Assembly (NCBI GenBank): GCA_965202585.1
Contig: OZ241833.1
Location: 26,412,001-26,476,000 of the forward strand
DNA length: 64,000 nt
Source: Thalia democratica
Lineage: Eukaryota
Direction of reading: 5' to 3'
Shown here: piece by piece, positions 17,846 to 43,500 of the stretch
How the letters are laid out: each line of letters opens with the position of its first letter
Position numbering within the stretch: the stretch's first letter is position 1
Position numbers and translations under genes: made by a program
Notes under the pieces: model-generated
What the model was told of the DNA's origin: nothing
Databases searched by the model: none
Seen by the model: only the letters and a program-made list of their open reading frames with translations

Positions 17846-20218
17846 ATACTTTTTAGCTTATAATATACCTTTTTAAAACAATAAAACAAAGGTTTCGTAA
17901 TAAAAAAGTACAAACTAATTTTTTAGTTTAATTTTAGTAACTACTAGTTCTTATAATATGGATATTTTAACGCATTAAACAACGTTAAGTAGTAAATAGA
18001 GCGGTTTAAGTAGTAAAAAAAAAATTGTCCTTTGTTAGCAACAGACTCGTATTTTATTAGAACTAAAAATATTCACTTTAAATTCAAAAATAAAGTTTTA
18101 GATAATTTACTTGTTTTTCTTAATCTTTAAATCAGGTTTGGAATAAGAGCTAGTGTGTAAATACATGAAACAAAGTAAGAATCACAAAATTTACTCACAA
18201 GCAAAATAAAAACTTTTGAACGCTTTTGATATGAAAAACTTAATTTGTTTTTTCTGCATAAGTTTTTTTTAGCTAAAAGTTATGTCGCAGGTCAGAAGTT
18301 TTTACATTTGGTCTTGGTTTGCGGAGTCTTGTGTTAAATATTTCTTAGCCTAACACTAAACTGGTTACTTTTTTTTTAAATAAACCGGTATAAATGATTA
18401 GTTATAAGTAAAAACAGCATAAATTTAGTTTTTTGTTGCTATATCTAAATTTAGTTTTCTCATATTTATACAACTAAATATTTTACAAACGTTAATCACA
18501 ACCAAACCAAAAAATAAAAATAATCTAATTTACAAAATTCTCTTATTTATGGTATTTAAAAAAGATAACTCAGTGTTAAACGTAAGAACATTTAGCCAAT
18601 AATTTTTTAAATAGTGAGTTAATTTTACTTAAACTGATTTTGATTTTTGCTAACAGTTTTATTTCGATGACTAGTAAAAACATATCCAAAATAAGTTTGT
18701 AATGTTGACAGTTTCAAGCAACTTAAATAAAGTGTTGAAAAAAAACATAGTAATTTTTTTTTTAAAGTTTAAAGATAAACTGCGATTAGTGCACGGAACT
18801 AACTCTTTAATAAACTTACTGTGCTCACCTTTAAAAAAATTTAAGAACGACTGTAGTGATCTGTATTAAATCAAAAAATTTTATCAAAACTTTTATACTT
18901 TTTAAACTTTTGTTGTTATTATATTTGTAAAATATTATAAATCAACAATATTCTCATTAAGAAAATTATAACTACTTTTAGATAGCTAATTAATAAAACC
19001 AAAAATAAAATCTACAAAATGATTATTTTTAACAAACTTAGCATTTAAAACCGTCGTAAATGTAGTATAACACTTTTGTAAAGATGAAAAACATTAAATT
19101 ATAAGATATACTTTTTTAGTCATCTATTGTAAAACAGAATTTTGCAAATATAGCAGTGTTACTCACTATGCACGTTTTCAGCACATCAGTATTCGATAAT
19201 TTGAAAATATTCAAAAACGGTAAATAGAGAAATTTCCAGTTAGTGAGCACATCTCGCTTATGTTTATAAAAAAACTATAATAATTTATTAAACACTGGTC
19301 CAGATATATTTGGCTTAGATCAATGTCAAAACGTTGGAATACAAATTCATTAAGCTTAATTAAAATAGTAAGCATAAGGGCTTAAAGCAATGTTCTTCAG
19401 TCTAATGTCTAAAATATAGATGAACCAAAAAACAGAAAGTAAAAATAATAAAAATGTGTATATACATTTTATATCTTAAAACCATGAAGGCTAAGGGAGT
19501 TATGTTTGTTTTTTTAAAGAAATGTTTAAAAAGTATTTTATCTAACTGTTTTTGTTCGAAAACAAACAATGTTTTTTTTTTTTGAATTCACAAAAACATC
19601 TTAGAATTAAAGTATTATGAATTAGAACAAATTGAATTTATACTTAGAATTTTTAAAAACTTTTCTTCATGATAACACTGTATCAACAATTTGGATTAAA
19701 AAGTTGTAAACTTGTCTTGGACGAGACGTTAAAAGGTATCCGTGGTGTGAGACTCGATAACCGAAATGTTCTTCGTGCACCAGGTCCTACGGCCAGATAT
19801 CTTAAATAACTTTTTTTTTTCAATAAACAATAACTTCATATTAAGTTTAAAAGCTAAAATAGTAACTTCGTACGCCTAAAGTATTAGACTTGTCCAATTG
19901 ATTTGTGTTAGCTACTGCTGCCAGGAAAAGTTATAGCTTTACACAGCTTGAAGACTCTAGTGTTAAGTAGCACGCAAGTATTTAGTTTATGTGAAAAATG
20001 AAGCATTACTTTAAATTCTTAAAACTTGAAAGCAAATTTAAATATTCATTTTAGTTTTTAACAAAATACTAGCGAGATAAAGTGATATACTTTTTAATTA
20101 TATTTAAAATTTCAACAGAAGTCTTTACAGACTTTTTTAAGTTGCATTCTGACAAAACTTATCATTTTATTTATACATATAGAAAATAGAGTAGTAAAAC
20201 TCTGGGAACGGGTCAGAA

Positions 20219-20600
20219 AAGCACGGGTGACACTTTAGCACGGTGTGACACTTTAGCACGGTGTGACACTTTAGCACGGTGTGACACTTTAGCACGGGGT
20301 GACACTTTAGCACGGTGTGACACTTTAGCACGGTGTGACACTTTAGCACGGTGTGACACTTTAGCACGGTGTGACACTTTAGCACGGTGTGACACTTTAG
20401 CACGGTGTGGCACTTTAGCACGGGATGACACTTTAGCACGGCGTCACTTTAGCACGGAGTGTCACTTTAGCACGGGGTGACACTTTAGCACGGTGACACT
20501 TTAGCACGGGGTGACACTTTAGCACGGGATGACACTTTAGCACGGCGTCACTTTAGCACGGAGTAACACTTTCGCACGGCATCATTTTAGCATGGAATGA
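20219..20600. repeat. Left TIR tandem array, unit gcacggtgtgacacttta (18 bp) with 16-bp variants
   Basis: About 20 units visible; gives rise to the spurious VLKCHT and HRAKVS ORFs. Confidence 0.95.
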
Positions 20601-23250: not shown

Positions 23251-23600
23251 GTGCTAGAGGTGAGCCATTGTTTCCAATTCCTTTGTGGAGTCAGTACGAA
23301 CAAGTACTTACAAAAAGTGATCGAACGAACAATATTGCTGAAGCAGCGCATCGAACTTTGTACGCAGTATTAAATGGAAACCATCCAAATCTGTGGAGTT
23401 TTATAAATATTCTGAAAACGACTCAGATTTCTCGGGATATGGGACTAGAACACCTTCTGGCAGGGATAAAACCAGATCCCAAAAGAATAAGGTTCAGACA
23501 AGCAGATGAGCGTCTGTTTTATCTGGTGTCAAGTTTTAATGAAAATAATAATATACTTGAATACCTACGCGGTATTCAATACAATTTTGATATAGATTAA
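23251..23600 (+). pseudogene. MULE transposase C-terminal exon (remnant)
   Basis: ARGEPLFPIPLWSQYEQVLTKSDRTNNIAEAAHRTLYAVLNGNHPNLWSFINILKTTQ matches the animal MULE motif FPxxLW...RTNNxxExxH...HPxxWxFI; lies inside the TSD-bounded element. Confidence 0.85.
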
Positions 23601-24249: not shown

Positions 24250-24710
24250 TGTTAAAGTATCACCCCGTGCTAAAGTGAAACTGTGCTAAAGTGACACTCC
24301 GTGCTAAAGTGTCACACCGTGCTAAAGTGACACTCCGTGCTAAAGTGACGCCGTGCTAAAGTGTCACCGCGTGCTAAAGAGACGCCGTGCTAAAGTGTCA
24401 TCCCGTGCTAAAGTGACACTCCGTGCTAAAGTGACGCCGTGCTAAAGTGTCATCCCGTGCTAAAGTGACACTCCGTGCTAAAGTGACGCCGTGCTAAAGT
24501 GTCACTCCGTGCTAAAGTGCCACTCCGTGCTAAAGTGACGCCGTGCTAAAGTGTCACACCGTGCTAAAGTGTCACACCGTGCTAAAGTGTCACACCGTGC
24601 TAAAGTGTCACCCCGTGCTTAAGTGTCACACCGTGCTAAAGTGTCACCCCGTTCTAAAGTGTCACACCGTGCTAAAGTGTCACCCCGTGCTAAAGTGACG
24701 CTGTGCTTTT
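24250..24710. repeat. Right TIR tandem array, unit ccgtgctaaagtgtcaca (reverse complement of the left array)
   Basis: About 25 units of 16-18 bp, inverted relative to 20219-20600. Confidence 0.95.
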
Positions 24711-28537: not shown

Positions 28538-31500
28538 CTGTTGTCATGGCAACGTGGTTACAAAGTAACAGTGGGCTAATTTTTTCATTTACTTAGGAAT
28601 CGTAGTCAATATTATTAGCAGTGCTTAGAGCTGGGAGTGGCATTTGTACTTTAAGTTAAAGTTGAGTTGTACAAATTTAGACGTTTTTGAGCTTTAAGTT
28701 CTGACAAATTTCAGATTAAAAATTGCATAATTAAAATGTGTGGAAAAATAAAATAAAATTAATGTCTATAGTTGAATTTTAAGTTTTAAACATCGTTACC
28801 TAAATATAATTTTACAACTGAACTAAATCTTAATATTAAGATTTTAGTGTCATTTACAGTGGACATTAACTAAAATAAGAAAGAAAAATCTTTTGTTTTT
28901 AGCTGCTGTTTATAAACCATTAATTTTTAGAATTTTTCAGTAAATAATTATTCTTTAGACTATTTTTGAAATATTTATCTAAAACTACTCTTAATTTTTA
29001 CTAAAGGATTCTACGAAGTAAGCACCATGTTGTTTTAAATTCAATTAGCTATGTCCATCGAAAAGAAAAATATTTCAAAACGATTTTTTACGTTTACCAA
29101 CTCAACATATTTTTTCTACAATATTAACTGCATAATCTTATTTTCCCATGAAATTTGTCAGACTCAAAACACAAAGAAGTATAAACCCGCATACTAATTG
29201 GTTTAACTGAACGCATATTCGAAATAAAAACTCAGCTCATGCTACTACTTCAAATATTGACTCATATTTCCAAGTAAAATATAGTTTACAATTTAATTTG
29301 GAAGACACTATTTAATTAATTTATTAGATCTAATGTTTGTGGGTATTTTTCAACATCCTTAAAACTTAACTTGATATTTTATAAATAAAGCTTCTATAGC
29401 ATATAACACAGTTGAGTTTCAGTGTTTGATTAACTTTAAAAAATATACGTCAGTAGTTTGTTAAAAACACCCTTTTTAAAGAATCTTTTCAGTGTGAAAA
29501 CACTTTAAAGCAAAATTATAACAAGTAGACTTAAATTTAAAAAATATATACTTTAAATTATTTTTGAACAAACCTTGTAGAGCGTCTCGGCAAACAGTGA
29601 CCTTGTCGTCTTTTACTTCAACATAATCTGTTTGTTGTTTATTTGTAATCAGAAGATTATTGCTAGAACTTGATTAAAAAATTAAATGCTTTAAATTAGA
29701 AGTTCACAAAATGTTTTACTAAAATAATTGCAAAAACTGTACAAAAAGTTGATTGGTTCAATTACCAAGTTTATTGCTTTCTAAGGTCATACAAAAGTAA
29801 AACCAGTAATTAAGTGTTACAACGAAAATGAGTTGTTTTAAAAAGTCTGATTCAAGCCCTTTTCAAGGTTAATTTGAATCAACTTTAGCCCGGCAAATCA
29901 TAGCAACAAGTATTAATTCAAAATGTGAAATGAAAATATTTGAGTTCGCTTTTTTAATGAATTGCAGCGATCAATCACAAACAAATTTAAAAATACTGAT
30001 TATTTTGGTTCGTTTACATTCATAATAACCATGAAAAAGAAATTATTGGAAATTATATGAAAATTAAGAAATACCAAAACTAATAAAAAGTTATAACTAA
30101 TACAACTTGACTATTCAGTAGAAGTAAAATGGTAGGCTGTTGTAATAGTGTTTTATAGGCATAAACAAACTAATAAAAGTTATTTCTTAAGCCAATTTTT
30201 TATTTTCTTGAAGTGCTGACTACACAAGATATATCAAACCAAATAAATAGAATATATTTTGAGGACTGGACAATAATTTTGCATACAGAAATACTATTTT
30301 TTTGTTAAAATTTAAGTAACTTTTGGCATTGATAGCAGTAAAAATAATTTAATCTTTCTCAATTTAATTTGGAGATTAAAAACTCAAATTACAGCTTTCT
30401 CATTGTAAACAAAACATGCAGATTTAGCCAAAACAGAAATAAACTAAAGTCTGAAAGTAGCCATAAAAAAGTTAAATCACAATAATTCGAATTAATTTAA
30501 ACACATTGAAGCAAAATTGAACAAAACTATTAACATAAACTACAAGTTTTAAGAAAAATTATTTCTACTAAAACTTTTAAACAGAAAGTAATTTGTTGAT
30601 TTGCAGCACCTGTTTATTATAATACTGACAATTAATGTGTGGACTACGCGGCCTAGGGTGTTTTAGTAATTACAGTATAAAATAACGCAACTTCCATAAA
30701 CTAAATTAGAAGTAAACAAAAAGGATTGGACAAAAATTTTTTTTGAATTACACAAATTAGCAAAATACATGTTTTTATAAAACACAACAAATATTTTACT
30801 GTATTAACAGCTTATGAGGTGTAAATGAAAAACTTGTTGTGTGTAATAGACACTAGTCTGATATTGCTATAAATAAAGTTAGACATTTTAATAATTTTAT
30901 ACTAAATAAAATTTACTGTAATAATGACTGCAGCAGGAAATTAATTGAACATAAAAAAAACAAATTTATAAACATTAGTAAAATACGTAAATTGAACAAA
31001 TTTGATAAATTAAACGCGTCAGCTTAATTAACTTCAAATGCAATTGCATAAAAAAACAACAGAAATTATCGGAATACCAGAATTAAAATATAAAACAGCA
31101 CAAAACAAAAAGTAAATTAAACTCATTCCAATTTTTAACCGAACAAACCAAAGAGGGCAACGGAAAATTGACAGAGAAACCAAAAATTAAAAAAAAAATC
31201 AATTATAAAAATTAAACTCGTTCCATTCCACAGCAGCAATTACCATCGAAACCAAACTAAGACAACGAAAATTGACAGAGAACCCAAAATTTAAAAAAAA
31301 TTCCGCCAACAATTGCCAAATCTGAACCGCGAACCTTTGTTGACGTGCACGAAGCGGCAGAACGGCCGCACGCACTTCCCGCTCTGGAAGTCCCGGCACA
31401 CGGTGAGTGAGGTGGGCGCGTGCCGGCCGTGGCTCGCCATGCCGAAGCTCGCCGCCACCTTCGTCGCCAGGTACTCGTCGCTGGTCAGCTGCAGCAAGTT

Positions 31501-34500
31501 GTTTGTGACGTCACAGTTGTTGTGAAAAAAAAAATTAAGAGGGAGCACGCACCCGACTTAAAAAAAACAAACGTTTTTCAAGGTCTTTGAAAGAATTTAA
31601 TGCTGACTTTTCAGTGAATGGAACAAACACCATTCATTTGATATTTAGGACTTTTTTTTAGTTTTCAATAAAAAAAGCTTTAGGAATGAAATTTGGTAAA
31701 AAATTGAAATCTTTTTTAAACTTTTTGACTAAGTATCTTAAATATATTTAGCTTGAACATTTTGCACAACTCAAATTAAGTACAGTAACCTCTCGCTTAT
31801 TTACGCACAGTGTGTCCACAGAATAAGTGCGTAAAGATATGAGAGATCGTAAAGATACGAGAGGTACCAAATATACTTAATATAATGACTGTTTTTTCAT
31901 ATTGCTTCTAGTTAAAAGCAGACTGGGGATTTTCCAACTTTTAACATTTTGTTTACTTAATTTATTAATATGTATGAAAAAAAAAAGAAAAAACTATACA
32001 CACAGTAATAAAAAGAATTTAAATTTATATAAAATAGTAGTACTTGTAGAAAAAATTTACTAATTTTAATAATAAGATTTTACCTTTATTAGTATGTGAT
32101 TTATTTAGAACTTAACATTTATATTCTATTCTACTTAGCAAATTCAATTTAAATTAAGCATTTGTTTACAATTAATAAACGGTTTGGTGTCTATATTAAA
32201 ATTTGTTTATATAGCCTTTTACAAAAATATGCATTTGTGGCTGTAATGGATTTCTTCTTTTGAACAAAAATATTTAAAATATAACAAACATGTTAATACT
32301 GAGGTATAACTTAATGTTTATCAATTAGTCAAGAAACATAAGTTTACAAATTTTGAAGATATAGAGAGGTGATTTATTATTTAAAAACATGTTTTAAATT
32401 AAAAATATACAATAAACCTAATTTTTGTAATATTAAAAAAAAAAAAAAATTTTACTTTTTGAATTTTGTAGAATTCTAAAATGCGTAACTAAACGAGAGT
32501 GCGTAACGTCACGAGTGCGTAAAGATGTGAGAGGTTACTGTACTATGCCATATCAATTTTATACCTTATTTAACTTCTTATTAATTTGTGGAAATATTTA
32601 TAATCAAAGTGAAATATAGAGTTATCAGATAAAGTATAAAATAAATCAAATAAAAGCTGAAATTTAACTTTTTTAGTAAAGATATTTCATGTAAATTAAA
32701 TTGGGCAACTAAAATTGATATAAACAAGCCTTTTTATATTGATCTTAAAATATTCGATCTAATATAGCACAATTTAACATATTAACTCTAGAATAACAAG
32801 TAAAACCAAGTTTTTATTAATTACTTTTACATAAAAGACATATTTGGTTGAACTAAATCAATATTCTTAGTCAAATTAATTATTAATAAAAAAAAAAGTG
32901 AGTAGATATAAAATAAGAGCAAGGATATGTGAACAAATATTAAGTTCAGATAGATATAAGATCTTTGTAATATTAAATTAAGTAGTTTGCTTTATACATG
33001 TTGAATAAATTTAATAACTTGTTAGAAAAAACAATAGCTATGTTATGTTCTGTTTGACTGAAGAATTTCTACATGGTTTATTCTTATAATTCTAAATACA
33101 TGATACAAACTTTTCATCTTAAAAAGATGTTTCTGTGTTTCTTTTTGTCAGCAATTACATACATATACTAGGGTTGCCACTCATTTTTTCAAATTTTTTT
33201 CCAGGTTTTCCAAATTTCTTCCAGGTTTTTAAAAGTACACATTTTTGGGTCTAATTTTAGTTTTAAGTTAATTTCTATTAAAGAAACTGTGTTAAATAGA
33301 ATAAAAGCATTGAAAAGATACTGTAAAGTTACTTTAGCGGTGTTTTGATGATGACAAAAAATCTTAAATATATGATAGATTTTTAGTCTCAAATCAAATT
33401 TTACAGCTGTAAATGTTAAAGTTATTAAAAATTCAAGGTTTTTCCATGTTTTTTGATCAAATTTCCAGGTTTTTCCAGTTTTTTTTTCAAAATTTCTCAA
33501 ATTCCAGGTTTTCCCAGGTAAAGTGGCAACCCTGATATACAGAAAGAACTTTAACAAAAAAACAACAAGATCAAAATTTCCTTGTAAAATGAAGTTATCA
33601 AAATACTATAATCATGTATATTATCTGCAGTTATTAAAAATAGAAGTTAATATAAATATAATCAAACCTATTTAAATAAACCAGAAGATCAAGACTTTCT
33701 AGCAATAGTTTGTAAACAACAAGTCAATTAATCATACAACTCGGCTACAAAATACATTACAAGACCGACAGTCTAAAGAAAGTATTTTTTTAATTTCAAC
33801 AGTGCCACAAGTATATACACAAGCAAAGCATGAAGCGGGCAAGCATTACAAGTGTTAGTGGTGCAAAAAATGTTAAAATATTATCAAACAGTTGCTACAA
33901 TCCGTCGAACATATATCGATAGAGGGGATATTTTGAAGCAGCCTGTAGCAAAACTCTTAGATTATAAAGTAGATTTTTTGTTTACTTTTAAACTTTTGTA
34001 AACGTTAAGAATAAAAACTGCAAATTAGCAGGTCAAAGTAAACTTAAAAATTATCCGACAAAAAACATTTATATTTTTCCTTGTTTTTTTGTCAAATCTT
34101 ACCTGGTGGCTTCTGCCTTGCTGCGGCTGCTGCGATTGGTCGAACAATGTGGCGGCAATCGCTGATTGGTTCGCTGCCGTCTGCCCGTTCGCCACCTGAC
34201 TTGCGACCACCTGATGGGGTTGCTGAGCCGATTGTGACGTCATTGGGTACTGGAGCTGCATGATGGTCGGCAGCGCTGTGTGACGACACATGGCGTCAGT
34301 GTGACGTAATAATACAACTACTAGATTTTGTGATGAAAGCAAAAATAACATGACGTGCATTTAATTTGGTTTATATCTTTTCTTAATTATTCGCTCTAAA
34401 CACAAACTTTCAAAACTGGCATTACTTTTTGCTTTGAATAAAAAAGTAAAAATTTGTTTCAGGCAAAATTAATGAGAAGCTTTTTCGTAGTTTGGCACAA

Positions 34501-37500
34501 AAACAGAAGCAAAATGAAGCATGATGTGAATTTTGAACGTAAAAAACTTAGCTTTTTTATTTTCATTTAATGCAAAAAAACAAAATTTGACTTGAAATTT
34601 TAGCAGAAAAGCTTTAAAAGGGTACTCGCACCCTTCAAAAGAGATTAGTAAGTTGCAGACAAAAATCACATCCGAAGGGAAAATAAACAATAAACTAAAA
34701 AGAACTAATCGGAGCTGCAAATTACCTGAAGTCTGCGGCTGGTAGAAAGCGGGCTGCTGGGAGAGCGCGTTGAAGGTGCTTCCCCCTCCGTACAGGGTGG
34801 ACAAACTGGTCGCCTGCTGGTTCGCGCCCAGCTGTCCGGACTGACCAGGGCTGATGAGGTTCATGCTGGACGTGTCCATCACCTGCCGTTTCAACGGGGG
34901 CTGCCCGTACCCGTTGCTAAGCTGCGAGGGGTTGAAAATTTGTTTACTGATAGAGTTTTTACATGTTTTAAAATTTAAATGAATTTTTGGTAAGTTATTT
35001 AAGAGATATTTTGCTGTATTAAATTTTTTCTATTACTTTAGTTCTGTTTAAAGCATATTTTTAAAACTTTGAATACAACAAGCAACTTTTCAATCATTGT
35101 TTTAAATCTTTTGTACAGTCAATAAACTTATTTATGTAGAGAACTTTTTGGAATGTAAAGAGTAAACATGTTTGCTTTAAGATACTTTTTCAACTATACT
35201 CGATTCAAATACACAAGTTTAGTAATAAAGTTTGTAACATATAAATAAACATATTTTATCGTATTTTTGCATTAAAAGCTAAATTTAAAAAGTTTATTTC
35301 AAACACAGTCTACTTTTCTTATTTTGTTGCATCAAACTAAAAATATCTTAATGCTTCTTTTTTATAACAATTTAAAAACCCCGAAATGCAAATTAAAATA
35401 AAAATATTTTACTAAAATTCAGTTGTACTTTATAAATTAAAAAGTCCTTGTTCAACGTAATTATTGATGTTTAAAGAATGATAAAACAGTCTTTCTTTTT
35501 AATTTAAAAAGTTTATTTTATATAGTATTTTTGGTTATTATTTTAAAGTAAGACATTAACACTATCAAAACTTAAGAAGTTATATCTATTAAAACTATTA
35601 TTCTAAATGACTTATTTTAAAACTTCAGACCATTAAAGTAACTTTAATTTCTAATCTAGTTTTCCCTACACCATTTTTTATCCATTATATAACTAATTAA
35701 AGTATAAATATGTATACATTTACAATATATATAGTTAAGACAAATCTACAAACTATTACTTGAAATATATTTAACTTAGTTTATAAGATTTCGTATTAAA
35801 GATTAAAAACATTCTCTTCAAAACATGTCTTTGTATTTATTTGTGTAGTTTTAGCTACACCTTATAACTGGTACACAGTTTAGTTAGAAAGTTATTTTAT
35901 TTAAAAATCCACTCATTAAAAAAAAATGGTATTTGAAATGTTTACTTGGTTTTTTCGTTACAACAGAAAATACTTAATCTCATGCTTAGCTAAAATTAAT
36001 TTAGTTTTTCAAAAATAATCAGTTTAAAAATTTTAAGAAGTTTCTTATCTAAAGTAGTAAAATTAAGCTTGAAGAAGACTTTTAAAGAACATATTATTTG
36101 CACTAGCCTACTTTAAACACTTTAACATTTGTAAAACAAAACAACTAAGAATATTTGAAGCAGCGGCAATTTTCTCCAGGCGCATTTTGATTTCTATCTC
36201 AAACCCAAAGCACACCAAAATTAATTAAAAATTTCGAGCAAACTCTAACAAAGATTTATAAACTGAACGTAGAAACAAAATTGCTACTGCGATCTATAAG
36301 CAATTAAAGCTGGCTTGTATAAAAAGTACATTTATATTTATGTATTTACACATGATAACTACTACAGCAAATTAATTCAAGCAATAATTTTTATTACCAC
36401 GTTGTCCATAGCAACCATTGTCCTCTTTTGAGCGGCCTGTTGTCATGGTGAAGCGCCAAACAGCCAATCAGCATCAAGACAGCAGCATTGCAACAGCCAA
36501 TGAGAGCACAGCAGAAAAGGTGGAACCAAAAAATAATAAATTAAAAGAGATCAGTGGAAGTTGAAAAAACGGAACATTAAAACTGTCAATTGTTTTCAGG
36601 GGCTGAACAAATTGGACACTGGTAGGTCCTTATTTGTCTTTACAAGACAAACAGAAGAGTTATTTGATACGTAAAATTGTTCTACGTACAACTTTATATA
36701 GATTATGGGGTATATTTAGAATGTTTTGAGGAGTAAAAAGTTGAATAGAAACTTTATTAAGTTTTAAAACCTTTTTAAATTTTAAAGTGTTTAGCCCCTA
36801 AAAAGTTGACTAAAGCAGCTTTTTTTATGAAAATATTTATTAATTAATTAAAGTAACTATCAATAAATTATCTGAATATAAATATATTGAAACAGTCTAA
36901 ACTGTGTAAGTCGTAAAATTTATTTGATTTTAATATTAAATCGCTTTAAAGATTTCTCATTAAAACAGTTACATGTAAATAATCCTAGTATATCCACAGT
37001 AAAGTTTTTTAATTAACAAAGTACTAGTTCCAAAATTAAGCATTTTTATAATTGGCATTTGGGTGTATGTGAAAAAAGGAATTTTATTAATTGTTATATT
37101 TTTCTTTTCCAAAAACGTTTTGTGTCGTCTTAATTCATGATTGAAAGAACAACTAAATTAAGTAGACAATATGAGAACAAATTAGACGGTGAAAGAAATT
37201 TTTTATAGCTTTGGTAAAGGAAATCTTAAAATGGAAGTCTCTTTTAGGTTTCATGGATAATTTTTTACTAAAAACAAAGGGTAAAAATGGGAAAGAGTAC
37301 ATGCTTTTCTTCATGCTTAAGTTTGGATGATAAGCTATTACAAAAGTACTCTTACAACTGAAATTTTAATTAAATCAAAATAAATTAAAACGTTGCAAAT
37401 TAAAGTGAAGCCGCTTCTAATAGTCTACTAAACATTTTGGGTAAGATTGTGAAAGCGTTTTATGAAAAATGACATTCTTGTTAATAAACATGCATTCCTA

Positions 37501-40500
37501 AAAATTTTAATTTACGCGTTTTGTACAGAATTATAGTGCACTAGCTAAGCAAAAAGGTTGTGTAAAATTTATTTATCTCAAACAAATTATAAAATTAAGT
37601 TCTGATAACACAGAAAGTGTTTTTAAGAAATTGAGTTTTATTTATAAACAATAATAAATAAGGCTTATTTAAAACAATTTTTTTAAACAAAAAAAAAAAT
37701 TCTAGTAAAAGCAACCGAAATACGTTAAAAAAAAACGTTTTAAATTGTGAGATATAGCAACTTACTGTTGCTTGATTGTTATACATAAAAAATAAAAGCT
37801 ATCATTCCTTAACTCTTGTTGTCAAAGATATAAACTTTGTGGAAATTTTAAATGTCCAAGAAATATTTAACACAACATTGCTTAACCTAACTATAAATAG
37901 CATTAAAAGTAAAAGTATACTTGGACGTTAGTTATCTAAAACAAAAGATTTATATTTCATTTATTAAAATTTATTTTTACTTGATAGCACCGTATGGATC
38001 GTTTACTTAAAGTTGTATTCAATTTTCCTACTACGTGACTGGGTGGGTAGCAAAGAGGGTGTTTCTAATATGGGAAGATCCCCAGGATTGAAACTTACCA
38101 TGATGGGTTGCGGGGACTGAAGCTGAAGGGTGTGTTGCTGTTGCGGCTGAATCTGGGTGAAAATGGACGTTGCCATGGTAGCGGAGGGCTGCTGTTGCTG
38201 GGACGCCGCAGTCGAGGCCCGCATCTTTTGCTGAATAATTATTCGAAATTACGTTGCCACACACGATTCTATTTTTGGTGATTAAAAAAAAAATGCACAG
38301 CAAAAATTAATGCAAGCTTTAAAATATTAATTTTACTTTTGCCTGCCTACGCAGTTTAACTGAACCGTAATTTTTAACATTCTATGTCAAGCACGCACAG
38401 CAGCTTTTCCAAAGCAAGTGTTCATAGCATTTTGGTTGAAAAAAACTCTGTTTTTATTTGTAAAAAATAAAAAAAAGCACAAAATGTAAGCAAAGCGTTC
38501 TTAAAGCCTTAAGACACTTAAAATCGCCAAAACTCCACCAAAAAAAAAAAACAACGGAGCCTGGTGTGCGAACAAAAAAAAAACAAAACACGGTCGCCGT
38601 GGAAACGCTGCTGTGTGGGCGGCGAAAAATCCCCTGAAAAGGGAAAAGTGAACCTGGAGGTGGGCGGGGGGATGGAAGTACTTGCAGGCGTCCCTGGAGC
38701 ACCTGCCCTTGACGAAGTCCATGCAGACGGTGACGCAGTTGTCGTTGGGGTCGACGGAGGTTTTGTCGGGCGGGTGGCCGTACCTGCAGTCGTGCTCGCC
38801 CCGGCTGCAGTTCCCGCGCAAATAGTCCCTGCACACCTGAGAGGTCACACGTGGTTGGTTAAACGAAAATGGTCACTTTCGGTTTTGTAAACGGCGTAAA
38901 GATTTACATCAAACGCGTGTTGAAGGGAGCGACGGAACAATCACAACGACAAGCTCAGTGATCCCAGGTTGAAAGTAAAAAAGTGCAGCTAACTTGGGAA
39001 CATTGTGTGTAACATGGGTTTTAACGTTGTTAAGTAATATTATTTGGTTGTTTAAAGCTGTGCAAAAGATCAAAGGGTGTTGTTTAACCCCATTAAGGGG
39101 TTAAAGGTATATGAAAAAAATTGCTTGTATATACTTTTTTGTTAGATCTAATTGAGCAGGTTTACTTCTTGGGTTAAACTAACTTAACCCATAAAAGATC
39201 TACAAATACTGTCTTTTGCTATTTCAATTTAACGAGGTTTCAAAAAAACTTCAGCAGACTACAAGACTGAGACCACTGATAAAAGAAACAAAAACCTAGA
39301 CAATATTGATAAGTTTTATTGAAAAGTTTTACAAATATAACAGTTAAAATCCTAAATGCACTTCAAAACAACTTGAATCAAAAACAATTTTTCCTCAATA
39401 AAGATAATTTGTAGTATTTAAGAACATTGTTTATATTATAATATTTAATAAACTAATAAAAATGGAATTCAAAAGTATTTCTTAAACAAAAAAAAAACAC
39501 AAAATAAAGTTTGAGAAAAAAAAAATCGAGTCTACAACATCTGCTTGCTCACATGAAGGTACATTTGAAGTGGAGAAAAATTAATAATTCATCATCAGCA
39601 GATACATAAACTTCTTGTGAGGCTTCTTCAACAACAAACACACATATCACGAACATTAATCATTCAAAAGAGAGACTGCACAACGTTGCTCGCAGCGGCG
39701 TTTTATTGTTTTCAATTAATTTTAAAAAATACCATGTTTTCAATTATGTTGTCGTGTGTGACGTAATAAAAAATTTTTTAGAAAGACCTATGTGTAAACA
39801 ACATACAAAATTTAACTTCCTACTTAAGTAATTTTGAAAAGCAAACGGTTGTTTATTGTTTTAGTAATTTTACCTGCCTTATAGTTCGAAGAGCTTAAAG
39901 TGAATTTTATAAAAATATGAAGAATTTGCTTTCAATATATGGTTTATAAATAGATATCTTTGTACAGTTGTAAAAAAATACCATAAATTAATGCAGACTA
40001 ATACAAAAAAAAATTTGAATAAAACTACCTAGAAATACCATGGCAATAAATCAAAACTGACAGGGAGCAGTATAAAGTTTTGTATGGCTCGGATTTAAAA
40101 TAGCCTTTTAAAGCAAAACAAAACCGCGCAACACAATACGAGTATAAATATTGAGATCAAGTTTTAATACTGCTCTTGATAGGGAGCTGATATTTATAAA
40201 TGCGGCTGATATCGTCACGGTTCAGTTACCTTGCATAGGCAGGCAATTTTCACGCCCGGCTGAACGTGAAAATAAGCAAAGTTCAAACGCCCAAAAAGCT
40301 GCCTTTCTCTTGGTTTTGAATGCAAACAAAAAACAACTTTTTGAAAAATGATTAAAAGCTGATAGTAAAACAAGCGCAAAGCAAAGCAAGTTTTTGCGGC
40401 AAAATGTGTTTTGTCTGTTTGTGCTCGATGTGAATGATGATATCTACTTTTTACTTCGCTAATGCAATACAAGGGATTCGGCGTCTGGGGCAATTAGGCG

Positions 40501-43500
40501 GTACTTTCCCCTCATTATCCGGTGATCTTCCTCGATCACTTTGCTTCTGTTCTCAGACGAACATCGAGCCGCATAAAACATGATAATTACCCTTCCGAGT
40601 GATCAATCAATTACAATTAGAAGATTCCAAAAGCGAAAAACGTGTGAAAAATGTTAGTCAAACAAGCGTATGTGTGTGTGTGTAATGTACATAAAGCAAG
40701 CACCACTCTTTAAAACAAACAAAACTCGTTAACAAGTACCAAAAATTTGTAGGAAAAAAAAACTAAAGCAATTATTGGAAAGCAAAATTTCAAAAGCCGT
40801 TAAAAGTCAAAAATTAAAAGGCCGAAGAGGCACAAACCAAAAACCGAATTAAAGTTAAAAATTAAACTGCTGTAATTTTCAGCCATTGAAAAAACGACCC
40901 GAAACCATTATCGTGTGAAAATCACAGCAAAACTGCGACTTTTCTTCAAACCAACCTCGAGCCGATCGTTTCTTCCCTGTTGCTGCTGCTGCTGAGTGAC
41001 TTGCGCTGCCGCCGCCTGCTGGGTCGGCAGCATCATCTGCGGCTGCAGGTGCGTCAACAGTTGCGGCTGCTGCTGCCCCAAGTGGTACAGGGGAATAACC
41101 TGGGGTTGCGCCATGAAACCTGCAAAAAATTTTTTTTTGAAAGTTAAGTAATTTTTTGGCTCTAAATCGCTAGTGTTCGTGTTTTGGCGTTGAAAGGTTT
41201 ATTTTCGCTCAAATTTTTTCACTCCCCTTTTTTATGCTTAATGAGAATTGGCAAAAGTTTTTGTATTTTTAATAAAAAATAAAAGTGGCTGATTTACTTT
41301 GCATACATTTTTATGCCTTAATTGAAGTTTACCTATGAAGTTCAAATTTTATTTCATTACTTGTCTTTGATGCTAAAGTTTGGAGTCAAGTTAAATGCTA
41401 ATTTGTAAAATAATTATCTTTATTTGTTTTCGTTATTATAACTTTAAACTTTTCAAACTAAACACTTTGATTCTTTTGAAATGAATAATTTTTTTTTTTA
41501 CAAAACCAAAACTTTTTACCACCTTAATAACTGTTCATCAAGGTTACCCTTTTATCAATGTTTTTGCTATTCGAGCAATTGCTACTTTGAAAAGGTTTGA
41601 AAACAAAACAGAGAGCGTTGAAAAGCAAGCTGTAAGCTTCAGCTTGACTGACAATTAATCGGTAAGCAATTTACACGTAAGCCTCTTTATACAAATAAGC
41701 ACTAAAAGCAACTAGCAATAAATTAAAGCAGTAAATTAAGTTTTGTGCGCGTTTGAAAATAAGACTACATGTATGTATGTGGCTGGCTACTCAGTGCAAA
41801 CAGACGTTTTATGAGAGCGTAATTAAATCATCAGCTGCAATTTAGCCTTGATGCTATTTTTTTACAAGTAAACAATCGTGGTAATTTTTCAAATAATTAC
41901 ATCCAATAAAACACTGAAACATAGAGTAGCGAGCAATTTACTATTAAAAAAAAAGAAAAAGCGCATCTTTGGCACAACTGAATTTTCAATTATCTTCGAT
42001 TAGTGGACAAGTGATTTATTGCAGTAGAAAATGTAATTGTTTCAAGAAAAATAAAGATCTTTTATCGTTAGATGATTTATTCGACTAATAGCTTTGAAGT
42101 ATGTTAGCTAAAACTAGTCAATTACTTCTTAATTTGCTATTTTTTTCACTCAACCTTTACTATTGAGACAACCACCATCTTGGCGTTTAAATTTTCTTCA
42201 ACTATTACAACATCCAAAAAAGGACCCCTGAATATTTTTCGCAAAAAAAAAAAAGTCCAAACAGTTGTGCGCAAAGTTGACGCGCGTTTTCTCTGCGCAC
42301 AAAAAAGTACAAATTATTACGACAATTACCGGCGGCAGGATTGTACGCGCTGGCGGCATGCTGGAGCTGGTGGCTGCTTGCTATCAGCGGCTGGTATCCG
42401 GCGGGTAGCTGCTGGTACAATGCCGGGTTGGCGGAGAGGTGCTGCAGGCCTCCTATTGGTTGAGCGCTGGTGCCCGCCACTTGCTGATTGGTTGAAAAAA
42501 AAAAGAGAAATAAGTGCAAGCGGCATATATGAGGGGTGACTATAGATATGTATAAATTGCTTTTGAACAAAAAATATTTTTGCTAATTACGCCTGCTATG
42601 TTAGTTTTAATTGTTGTTTATAAGGGTTTTGCTAAAGTTTTGAACTGATTGTTTTACGTTAAGCAAAAACAAAAATTGTCAATTTAGAAATTTTAATTAA
42701 ATTAACTGTTATTTAAAAAAAATTATTGTACTAGTCTAATTGATATTTTAATTAATTTTAAAAAACATTTTTTTGAGGAAAAATATAAATTATTTTTAAA
42801 GTTAGATTTTTTTTACATTTTACCTTAAATGCATACATAATGAAAAATAAACGACTGCTGCAAACTAAACTTAATATTTTTATGAAAAAAAACATAAAAC
42901 TTAACTTAGTTTAAATTATTTTATGCTGGTATTGTTAAATTAATCAATAATTAAATAACTATAAATTGGTAAGCAAAAATTTTTCTGTGCAACTAAACTT
43001 TGAATGGTAAAAGCAACCTAGAAATAAGCTATAAAACGCCTTTTATGTATATATGTTTATTAAAACCCAGTTAAAGCCATTTCTCAACAAACGTTATTTT
43101 GATAAACACTAATAAGCAAGCTTTAAAATTTCTCTAAGACTTAATTGACAGCTTCAGCGATGTAACACCGTAATTACGACACTACATCAAAGCCACTTAA
43201 TAAACCAGTTTAACGAAAATAACAAAATTGTAAACTAAAACTAAATCCATTTTTAAATAATTCCAACAGTTAAACTAAATTGAGAAAAAAAAGCAAAATA
43301 GATATAAGCAATTTCTTCTTATTGTATACTTTATTTTAATGGGTATTTAGATAATTTATACACCATTAACCTTAATTAACAATTAGTACTGAAACGTTAA
43401 AAATCTAAAAGTTTCAGCTTAACAAGTTAAACAGTTTTATACCTATGAAAAATCGGACATTACAAAAAATAAAAAAACATGTTAAAACATCAAAACTCGA

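What the first reader, a model, noticed from the sequence alone, without database searches (positions are those of the whole stretch)
36398..36515. 39-nt KR cassette exon behind a YGCY cluster: vertebrate-style MBNL autoregulation of its own NLS
Seen: an in-frame phase 0-0 exon [13 protein letters not shown] sits between ...QPIM| and |[13 protein letters not shown], with six YGCY motifs in the 80 nt upstream of its acceptor. Inclusion gives KR-(18 aa)-KR. Known: human MBNL1 has a 54-nt cassette at the equivalent position (after ...AAAM). It supplies one KR of a bipartite NLS, about 19 aa from the second KR, and MBNL represses it by binding the upstream intron. Inference: the same negative-feedback circuit for nuclear localisation is present in this invertebrate-like genome, either deeply conserved or convergent.
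Basis: partly seen in the sequence, partly recalled or inferred. Interest (0 to 1): 0.75.

Follow-up and report, generated by a model that had tools for sequence, protein, structure and literature searches.

The report
Salp muscleblind's nuclear-signal mini-exon
The 39-base exon is real and spliced into mRNA exactly as predicted; it is the pelagic-tunicate copy of the small 'KR' exon by which muscleblind proteins in vertebrates and worms control their own entry into the nucleus, a circuit already published as ancient.

Summary
On the minus strand, 36398-36436 is an in-frame 39-nt exon ([13 protein letters not shown]) of the genome's single muscleblind/MBNL gene. Six YGCY motifs lie in the 80 nt before its acceptor; other acceptors of this gene have 0-2.

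Metatranscriptome contigs join 38099|36436 and 36398|34921, exactly the predicted sites. The cassette contig has about half the depth of the flanking exons, so skipping is inferred, not seen.

Ciona, Styela, Clavelina and a second pelagic tunicate have both +cassette and -cassette isoforms at the same place; Phallusia has the +cassette form. So do amphioxus and a coral. The spacing to the second KR is 18-21 residues in chordates (19 in mammals).

The intron also has a 144-nt AG-free zone with the pyrimidine tract pushed upstream of the YGCY cluster. This is the atypical layout described for vertebrate MBNL1 intron 4, and it recurs in three ascidians and a coral.

Feedback by MBNL and nuclear targeting are untested here. 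Verbeeren et al. 2023 showed the circuit works in C. elegans and reported KR-exon splicing across Bilateria, so this is a new member of a known kind.

The parts
36398..36436 (-). 39-nt cassette exon [13 protein letters not shown]. The first KR is at 36422-36427. The exon itself holds two more YGCY motifs.
   Evidence: Sequence and translation. RNA contigs join 38099|36436 and 36398|34921: with the loose end mapped. Orthologous cassettes in other tunicates.
36452..36513 (-). Cluster of six YGCY motifs (5 UGCU, 1 CGCU) at -77 to -16 from the acceptor. Candidate MBNL binding region (silencer).
   Evidence: Smaller clusters lie at the same place in Clavelina, Styela and Ciona, and a stronger one in the coral Stylophora.
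36439..36582 (-). 144-nt AG-exclusion zone before the acceptor AG.
   Evidence: only 0.06% of AG-to-AG gaps in the window are this long. Other acceptors of the gene have 23-107 nt.
36515..36560 (-). Inferred distal branch site (cacugAu, A at 36551, about -115) followed by the pyrimidine-rich tract (70-80% Y at -140 to -81). Not mapped experimentally.
   Evidence: read from sequence only. By analogy with the -141 branchpoint of vertebrate MBNL1 intron 4 (PMC7901844).
36392..36397 (-). 5' splice site GUG|guaaua, weaker than those of the flanking exons (AUG|guaagu and CAG|guaauu).
   Evidence: Its use is shown by the contig.
38099..38230 (-). Upstream exon QKMRAS...SPQPIM, the counterpart of the vertebrate exon that ends ...AAAM.
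34726..34921 (-). Downstream exon [16 protein letters not shown]... carrying the second KR (34886-34891).
   Evidence: The GQPPLKR motif is conserved in all tunicate homologues.
38654..38836 (-). Zinc-finger 3/4 exon of the same gene. It identifies the gene as muscleblind/MBNL. Only one match to it was found in the 802-Mb assembly.
   Evidence: Pfam zf-CCCH_10, E 7.5e-27. 1372 homologues. Single match in the own genome.

Best explanation
The window carries the only muscleblind/MBNL gene found in a very AT-rich pelagic tunicate, on the minus strand. Other agents of this scan take the animal for a salp.

The 39-nt exon at 36398-36436 is the orthologue of the MBNL 'KR cassette' (vertebrate MBNL1 54-nt exon 5; C. 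elegans mbl-1 exon 7).

Shown here:
- The exon is spliced into mRNA at exactly the predicted sites.
- It keeps the reading frame.
- Its depth is about half that of the neighbouring exons.
- Homologous cassettes of 11-13 residues are alternatively spliced in other tunicates.

Inferred (about 0.6): when included, its KR and the KR of the next exon, 18 residues on, form the bipartite nuclear localisation signal known from MBNL1, giving a nuclear isoform. When skipped, the protein is also cytoplasmic.

Inferred (about 0.6): MBNL protein binds the UGCU/CGCU cluster, which lies between a distal branch site and pyrimidine tract (about -115 to -80) and the 3' splice site. Binding hinders use of that 3' splice site, so a high nuclear MBNL level lowers inclusion. 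This would be negative feedback on localisation rather than on abundance.
For: Gene identity:
- CCCH zinc-finger exons.
- The nearest full-length homologues are tunicate muscleblind proteins from Phallusia, Clavelina, Ciona and Styela.
- Only one ZnF3/4 match in the own genome.

Use of the exon:
- In two RNA runs of one marine metatranscriptome sample there is a joint 36436->38099 with GT..AG ends on the minus strand, at depth 78.7 and 24.6.
- One 86-nt contig holds 31 nt of the upstream exon, the cassette, and 17 nt that map exactly to 34905-34921.
- The joint is absent from the DNA-like runs X3 and X5.

Alternative use:
- Cassette contig depth is 78.7 and 24.6, against 172.7 and 47.7 for the upstream exon and 264 and 63 for the downstream exon.
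- Intronic contigs reach only about 3-5.
- Both isoforms exist in Ciona (+APKRILALEDM), Styela (+GQGVKRPALALDM), Clavelina (+TAQKRVLAIEDV), a second pelagic tunicate (+STQKRLLTLDDV), amphioxus and a coral.

Position and spacing:
- Same flanking exons as in mammals, with a KR-KR linker of 18-21 residues in chordates.

Cis-architecture:
- Six YGCY in 80 nt, against 0-2 at other acceptors.
- AG-free zones of 144, 147, 364, 135 and 127 nt in the window, Clavelina, Styela, Ciona and Stylophora, each within the top 0.04-0.7% of AG gaps.
- YGCY enrichment in the four other species combined, Fisher p = 2.5e-4.
- Shared intron words TGCTGATTGGCTG (with Clavelina) and GCTGTTTGGC (with Ciona).

Literature:
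- Vertebrate intron 4 has a -141 branchpoint and a 90-nt YGCY region between it and the 3' splice site through which MBNL1 represses exon 5 (PMC7901844).
- C. elegans MBL-1 represses its KR exon, and KR-KR isoforms are nuclear (PMC10773944, PMC13191465).
- Ciona MBL represses the human exon-5 minigene (PMC5041496).
Against: - No experiment or data set here varies MBNL level, so the feedback is unproven.
- The skip junction 38099|34921 was not displayed by read laying, whose tables are truncated. Skipping in this species rests on contig depths and on orthologues.
- The RNA evidence comes from a single environmental sample.
- YGCY enrichment is weak in Styela and Ciona taken alone (3 motifs each, p 0.05-0.15).
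- The region is also UG/GU-rich and could bind other factors.
- The cassette's sequence similarity to the vertebrate exon is limited to KR, a hydrophobic and acidic tail, and length. Homology rests mainly on position.
- In C. elegans, proteins with one or no KR still enter the nucleus (PMC13191465).
Confidence: 0.65

Rival explanations
1. The exon is a real, conserved alternative KR exon, but other splicing factors set its inclusion (CELF-, PTB- or hnRNP-type proteins binding the U/G-rich, pyrimidine-rich zone, or tissue-specific factors). The YGCY motifs are a by-product of that composition, and there is no MBNL self-feedback in tunicates.
For: The upstream zone is rich in UGU, GCUG and UUGG words besides YGCY. 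A repeated AUUGGCUG word, shared with Clavelina, is not a YGCY site. Enrichment is modest in Ciona and Styela. In C. elegans a second factor, FOX-1, co-regulates the exon (PMC10773944).
Against: YGCY clusters recur at the same place in five species with otherwise unalignable introns. The layout copies the experimentally defined vertebrate silencer. Ciona MBL represses that silencer-dependent human exon. No GCAUG site lies within 400 nt of the exon.
Confidence: 0.22
2. Convergence: tunicates evolved a KR mini-exon and an upstream YGCY cluster independently of vertebrates.
For: The cassette sequences are short and share little beyond KR. Tunicate genomes evolve fast.
Against: The cassette sits between the same two homologous exons, in the same phase. 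The KR-KR spacing is 18-21 residues across chordates. An intermediate amphioxus cassette (…VQSLKRLRDPSDDLL) closely resembles the mammalian one (…VKSLKRPLEATFDL). A coral has it too. A published survey finds it across Bilateria.
Confidence: 0.05
3. The exon is effectively constitutive, or its splicing is noise, and the motif cluster is a chance feature of one intron.
For: The skip junction was not directly displayed. There is only one RNA sample.
Against: Cassette contig depth is about half that of both flanking exons in two runs, while intron depth is only 2-3%. Both isoforms are annotated or assembled in at least five other tunicate and outgroup species. The cluster's empirical p is 0.002, and the AG-free zone is in the top 0.06%.
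Confidence: 0.05

Closest known systems
Vertebrate MBNL1 (and MBNL2) 54-nt exon 5 (also numbered exon 7), the autoregulated NLS exon (Gates 2011; Kino 2015; PMC7901844)
   Same: - The host gene is orthologous.
- The cassette lies between the exon after ZnF4 (ending in M) and the exon with the second KR.
- It is phase 0-0 and frame-preserving.
- It supplies a KR 18-19 residues before the second KR.
- The upstream intron has a long AG-free stretch with distal pyrimidine tract and branch-site candidates, and a YGCY cluster between them and the 3' splice site.
   Different: - 39 nt rather than 54 nt.
- Little sequence identity beyond KR.
- No ultraconserved element: tunicate introns barely align.
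- CAG rather than the weak AAG acceptor.
- Repression by MBNL, branchpoint position and the localisation effect are untested here.
C. elegans mbl-1 exon 7 KR cassette (Verbeeren et al. 2023, PMC10773944; Lee & Zheng 2026, PMC13191465)
   Same: An invertebrate MBNL gene with an alternatively spliced exon carrying the first KR, next to an exon with the second KR. YGCY motifs lie near the exon. In the worm it is shown to be repressed by MBL-1 and to give nuclear isoforms. The paper states that the arrangement is present across bilaterian phyla.
   Different: The worm exon encodes 75 residues, not 13. It is co-regulated by FOX-1 through GCAUG, which is absent here within 400 nt. Tunicates were not named in the main text of that paper.
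RefSeq-predicted muscleblind isoforms of Ciona intestinalis, Styela clava and Clavelina lepadiformis, and the Phallusia mammillata cDNA
   Same: Direct orthologues. An 11-13-residue cassette xxKRxLxLxDM/V is included or skipped at the same junction. All have a long AG-free zone and 3-5 YGCY motifs upstream.
   Different: These are automatic annotations without described function. The window's cassette is more divergent ([10 protein letters not shown]) and has the densest YGCY cluster among the tunicates examined.

Membership tests
MBNL KR-cassette (autoregulated NLS exon) | The host gene is a muscleblind/MBNL orthologue with tandem CCCH zinc fingers. | tested here: met
   Pfam zf-CCCH_10 on the ZnF1 and ZnF3/4 exons. 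The best full-length homologues are tunicate and other animal MBNL proteins.
MBNL KR-cassette (autoregulated NLS exon) | The cassette lies between the exon following ZnF4 and the exon carrying the second KR, and is frame-preserving. | tested here: met
   ...SPQPIM|cassette|[12 protein letters not shown], compared with the mammalian ...AAAM|cassette|GIPQAVLPPLPKRP. 39 nt, phase 0-0.
MBNL KR-cassette (autoregulated NLS exon) | The exon encodes a KR that lies about 19 residues before the second KR (bipartite signal). | tested here: met
   Linker of 18 here; 19 in mammals, amphioxus, Ciona, Clavelina and Phallusia; 21 in Styela.
MBNL KR-cassette (autoregulated NLS exon) | The exon is included in mature mRNA. 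| tested here: met
   Contigs with both junctions 38099|36436 and 36398|34921 in two RNA runs of one sample, absent from the DNA-like runs.
MBNL KR-cassette (autoregulated NLS exon) | The exon is also skipped (a true cassette). | tested here: inconclusive
   The skip junction was not displayed. Inclusion of about 46-52% is inferred from contig depths. Skipped isoforms are present in five other tunicate, amphioxus and coral species. Searches for transcripts of this species found nothing.
MBNL KR-cassette (autoregulated NLS exon) | [quoted passage not shown] | tested here: met
   Six YGCY at -77 to -16, a 144-nt AG-free zone, and the pyrimidine tract at -140 to -81. The branchpoint itself is only predicted.
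MBNL KR-cassette (autoregulated NLS exon) | MBNL protein represses inclusion (negative feedback). | not testable with these tools
   Indirect only: Ciona MBL represses the human exon-5 minigene (PMC5041496), and worm MBL-1 represses its own exon (PMC10773944).
MBNL KR-cassette (autoregulated NLS exon) | Inclusion shifts the protein to the nucleus. | not testable with these tools
   Known for vertebrates and C. elegans. No localisation data exist for any tunicate isoform.

The most novel reading that the evidence does not exclude
The whole cis-regulatory module may be one homologous unit that predates the split of cnidarians and bilaterians. The module is a KR mini-exon, a long AG-free zone with a displaced branch site and pyrimidine tract, and a YGCY cluster between them and the 3' splice site. 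The published survey (PMC10773944) puts KR-exon splicing within Bilateria, and I found the intron layout described only for vertebrates, with YGCY sites shown for nematodes. Here the same layout appears in a salp, three ascidians and the coral Stylophora (7 YGCY in 80 nt, 127-nt AG-free zone, alternatively spliced LEGSRKRPHDTLTEL). That would make it one of the oldest conserved splicing-feedback architectures known.
Probability: 0.45. Interest if true: 0.55.

Novelty: new member of a known kind. Interest (0 to 1): 0.35.

Why it matters
MBNL proteins are central to myotonic dystrophy, and the exon-5 feedback sets how much MBNL is nuclear.

For this window the result is mainly a clean annotation. 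It adds a real 13-residue micro-exon that gene finders would miss, and it shows isoform diversity (with or without ZnF3/4, with or without the KR cassette) in a salp.

The wider value is comparative. Tunicate introns are otherwise unalignable, yet they keep the AG-free zone and the YGCY cluster, and a coral does too. This marks out the minimal conserved logic of the silencer. It also suggests Ciona as a compact, tractable chordate system (intron of about 1 kb, exon of 33 nt) for dissecting how MBNL blocks a distal-branchpoint 3' splice site.

Tried and rejected
- **Direct search for transcripts of this species spanning the skip junction.** Two exact-pattern scans of metagenome contigs and a protein search with the downstream exon found nothing.
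- **Genomic loci of further taxa.**
  - Phallusia P0018, Clavelina X3, Biomphalaria X15 and Glandiceps X4 are not on record, because only the longest isoform of a gene is indexed.
  - The amphioxus gene exceeds 100 kb, so no DNA was returned.
  - The Tara Oceans metagenome contig of a closely related sequence is only 912 bp and does not reach the cassette.
- **Intron alignment.** A multiple alignment of the upstream introns is poor, with 59% column identity and no block. Conservation was therefore assessed by motif counts, AG-free length and shared words.
- **RNA structure.** The last 140 nt of the intron plus the exon folds no better than shuffles (z = +0.9), so no structured element is proposed.
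- **Rbfox.** No GCAUG within 400 nt of the exon.
- **Downstream YGCY cluster.** The cluster at 36161-36241 is not matched in the three ascidians. I treat it as probably incidental.
- **Plus-strand ORF.** The ORF 36418-36564 (48 aa) overlaps the exon antisense. It was not searched; I set it aside as a chance ORF.

Full report
**1. What is in the sequence**

The window is 29% G+C and has no N. Its minus strand carries a muscleblind/MBNL gene spread over more than 35 kb.
- Exons encoding RDPEWLKVE / VCREFQRG... (ZnF1) lie at about 63.0 and 62.0 kb.
- [13 protein letters not shown] (ZnF2) lies at about 43.8 kb.
- Two Q-rich exons follow, ending in GRNDRLE at 40956.
- ZnF3/4 is at 38654-38836 and a linker exon at 38099-38230.
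- Then come the candidate exon, an exon at 34726-34921, and further 3' exons.

Minus-strand 36436..36398 reads GCC...GTG and translates to [13 protein letters not shown]. It is flanked by acaacag| and |gtaataaa. It is in phase with ...SPQPIM| upstream and |[13 protein letters not shown] downstream, giving KR-18 aa-KR.

The 80 nt before the acceptor contain six YGCY motifs (five TGCT, one CGCT) at 36452-36513.
- The strand's mean is 0.7 per 80 nt.
- 0.2-0.25% of windows reach six.
- Six other acceptors of the same gene have 0-2.

**2. Is the exon used?**

Only two RNA runs hold parts of the stretch. Both come from one marine metatranscriptome sample. Three DNA-like runs of two coded organisms hold 45-69% of its words.

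Laying the contigs gave these results.
- A joint 36435/6 -> 38098/9 has CT..AC ends on the plus strand, which is GT..AG on the gene strand. Its depth is 78.7 and 24.6.
- One 86-nt contig consists of 31 nt of the upstream exon, the cassette, and 17 loose letters. Those letters map exactly to 34905-34921, the start of the downstream exon.
- Neither joint occurs in the DNA-like runs.

So the exon is spliced into mRNA at exactly the predicted acceptor and donor.

The skipping junction 38099|34921 was not among the rows shown, because the tables are truncated. Depth argues for it all the same.
- The cassette contig has 46% (78.7 of 172.7) and 52% (24.6 of 47.7) of the depth of the upstream exon.
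- It has 30-39% of the depth of the downstream exon.
- Intronic contigs reach only about 3-5.
- The upstream-exon contig ends exactly at 38099, as expected at a graph branch.

I therefore infer roughly half inclusion in that mixed sample. This is an inference from contig depths, not a junction count. Attempts to find transcripts of this species elsewhere failed.

**3. Relatives**

A full HMMER search with the ZnF3/4 exon, a follow-up search and cluster look-ups show that the nearest full-length proteins are tunicate muscleblinds. At the same junction they carry, or lack, a homologous cassette:

| Species | Cassette | Skipped form seen |
|---|---|---|
| Ciona intestinalis | APKRILALEDM | yes |
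| Styela clava | GQGVKRPALALDM | yes |
| Clavelina lepadiformis | TAQKRVLAIEDV | yes |
| Phallusia mammillata (cDNA) | APKRVLTLEDVM | not seen |
| Second pelagic tunicate (metatranscriptomes) | STQKRLLTLDDV | yes |

Outside tunicates:
- Amphioxus isoforms carry or lack TPDKVQSLKRLRDPSDDLL, which is close to the mammalian TQSAVKSLKRPLEATFDL.
- The coral Stylophora carries or lacks LEGSRKRPHDTLTEL.

The linker between the two basic pairs is 19 residues in mammals, amphioxus, Ciona, Clavelina, Phallusia and the second pelagic tunicate. It is 18 here and 21 in Styela.

Position, phase, alternative use and spacing together argue for orthology with the vertebrate 54-nt exon, not convergence.

Only one match to the ZnF3/4 exon was found in the 802-Mb assembly, so any feedback would be true self-regulation. 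Earlier agents of this scan consider the genome a salp, probably Thalia democratica. I confirmed only the tunicate affinity and the planktonic source.

**4. The intron architecture**

Beyond the motif count, the acceptor is preceded by a 144-nt stretch without any AG. Only 0.06% of AG gaps in the window are this long.
- The last 40 nt are only about 50-55% pyrimidine.
- The pyrimidine-rich stretch (70-80%) lies at -140 to -81.
- It is preceded by a branch-site-like cacugAu at about -115.

The YGCY cluster thus sits between the likely branch site and pyrimidine tract on one side and the 3' splice site on the other.

This is the layout reported for vertebrate MBNL1 intron 4 (PMC7901844):
- a far-distal branchpoint at -141;
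- repression of exon 5 by MBNL1 acting through that region.

I fetched the orthologous loci of Clavelina, Styela, Ciona and Stylophora and located their cassettes.

| Species | AG-free zone (nt) | YGCY upstream | Empirical p |
|---|---|---|---|
| Window | 144 | 6 in 80 nt | 0.002 |
| Clavelina | 147 | 5 in 100 nt | 0.019 |
| Styela | 364 | 3 in 80 nt | 0.05 |
| Ciona | 135 | 3 in 80 nt | 0.09 |
| Stylophora | 127 | 7 in 80 nt | 0.001 |

- Each AG-free zone is in the top 0.04-0.7% for its locus.
- All five have the strongest pyrimidine tract displaced to about -80 to -140.
- Leaving out the window, because it was chosen for this feature, and using the 100-nt figures throughout, Fisher's combination gives p = 2.5e-4 for YGCY enrichment.
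- The introns otherwise do not align. They do share the words TGCTGATTGGCTG (window and Clavelina) and GCTGTTTGGC (window and Ciona).
- The region is not unusually structured (z = +0.9).
- It has no GCAUG within 400 nt.

**5. Mechanism**

Shown:
- a real, frame-preserving micro-exon of the only MBNL gene found;
- a conserved alternative cassette in relatives;
- conserved KR spacing;
- a conserved atypical 3' splice-site region loaded with MBNL-type motifs.

Inferred from published systems:
- Inclusion completes a bipartite KR...KR nuclear localisation signal (Kino 2015, as cited in PMC10773944 and PMC13044900).
- MBNL binding to the YGCY cluster lowers inclusion, so nuclear MBNL limits its own nuclear form.

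Support from the literature:
- C. elegans MBL-1 represses its own KR exon, and two-KR proteins are nuclear (PMC10773944, PMC13191465).
- Ciona MBL, like all homologues tested, represses the human MBNL1 exon-5 minigene in HeLa cells (PMC5041496).

I put about 0.9 on 'orthologous, alternatively spliced KR cassette'. I put about 0.6 each on 'repressed by MBNL through this cluster' and 'controls nuclear localisation'.

The main rival, at about 0.2, is regulation by other factors that bind the same U/G-rich zone.

**6. Novelty**

Verbeeren et al. 2023 state that paired KR motifs on adjacent exons occur in all bilaterian phyla except Ambulacraria. They also state that the first KR exon is consistently alternatively spliced, and they demonstrate the feedback in C. 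elegans.

The tunicate isoforms are present in RefSeq predictions. This finding is a new member of a known kind.

What I did not find described in the papers read:
- the shared AG-free / distal-tract / YGCY layout outside vertebrates;
- its presence, together with an alternatively spliced KR cassette, in a cnidarian.

That is the novel case, at about 0.45. It needs a systematic survey and experiments.

**7. Limits**

- One RNA sample, laid as contigs rather than reads.
- Skipping in this species is inferred, not seen.
- The branchpoint is not mapped.
- There is no functional test.
- Only four outgroup loci could be fetched.

Noticed in passing
window 40956 | 38230 and 40956 | 34921 (minus strand): RNA contigs join the GRNDRLE exon directly to the linker exon, skipping the ZnF3/4 exon in frame. 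They also join it directly to the LSNGYG exon. The loose ends at 38232 and 34923 map to 40958-40984 with 2 mismatches. In run X2 the ZnF3/4-to-linker junction contig has depth 11 against 48 for the linker exon, so two-finger isoforms may be the majority in that sample.
   Followed up: partly
window 34726 | 29627 (minus strand): A loose end at 34726 maps exactly to 29601-29627 (…YVEVKDDK). This is an alternative junction that skips the 34103-34275 exon and enters the third zinc-finger-pair region described by an earlier agent.
   Followed up: partly
L005:10921-10965 (Stylophora pistillata muscleblind locus): The coral has an alternatively spliced 45-nt KR exon (LEGSRKRPHDTLTEL, isoform X1 versus X3). 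It has 7 YGCY in the 80 nt upstream (12 in 200) and a 127-nt AG-free zone. The module may therefore predate Bilateria, beyond what PMC10773944 reports.
   Followed up: partly
proteins P0003 (Glandiceps), P0035/P0310 (Acanthaster): Ambulacrarian muscleblinds do carry a KKR-containing segment (…SNKKRARDPADEIL…, …SKKRAREPADDII…) before LPG(I/L)IP.PKKG. The first basic motif is present and the second is KK rather than KR. This nuances the published 'except Ambulacraria'.
   Followed up: no
window 36161-36241 (minus strand): A second cluster of six YGCY lies about 160-240 nt downstream of the cassette. It is not matched in Clavelina, Styela or Ciona.
   Followed up: partly
window 36470-36482 and 36500-36510 (minus strand); L002 upstream of 28461: The word AUUGGCUG occurs twice inside the YGCY cluster. 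The 13-mer TGCTGATTGGCTG is shared with the Clavelina intron. It may be a site for another factor or a low-affinity GC site.
   Followed up: no
window 20167-20439 (-) and 24543-24698 (+): Two arrays of an 18-nt tandem repeat (reading VLKCHT in one frame) lie in opposite orientation about 4 kb apart, inside the large intron. Both score as YGCY-dense regions.
   Followed up: no
window 23268-23600 (+): A 110-aa ORF between the two inverted repeat arrays (…NHPNLWSFINILK…ILEYLRGIQYNF) looks like the tail of a transposase-type protein. Possibly a mobile element in the intron.
   Followed up: no
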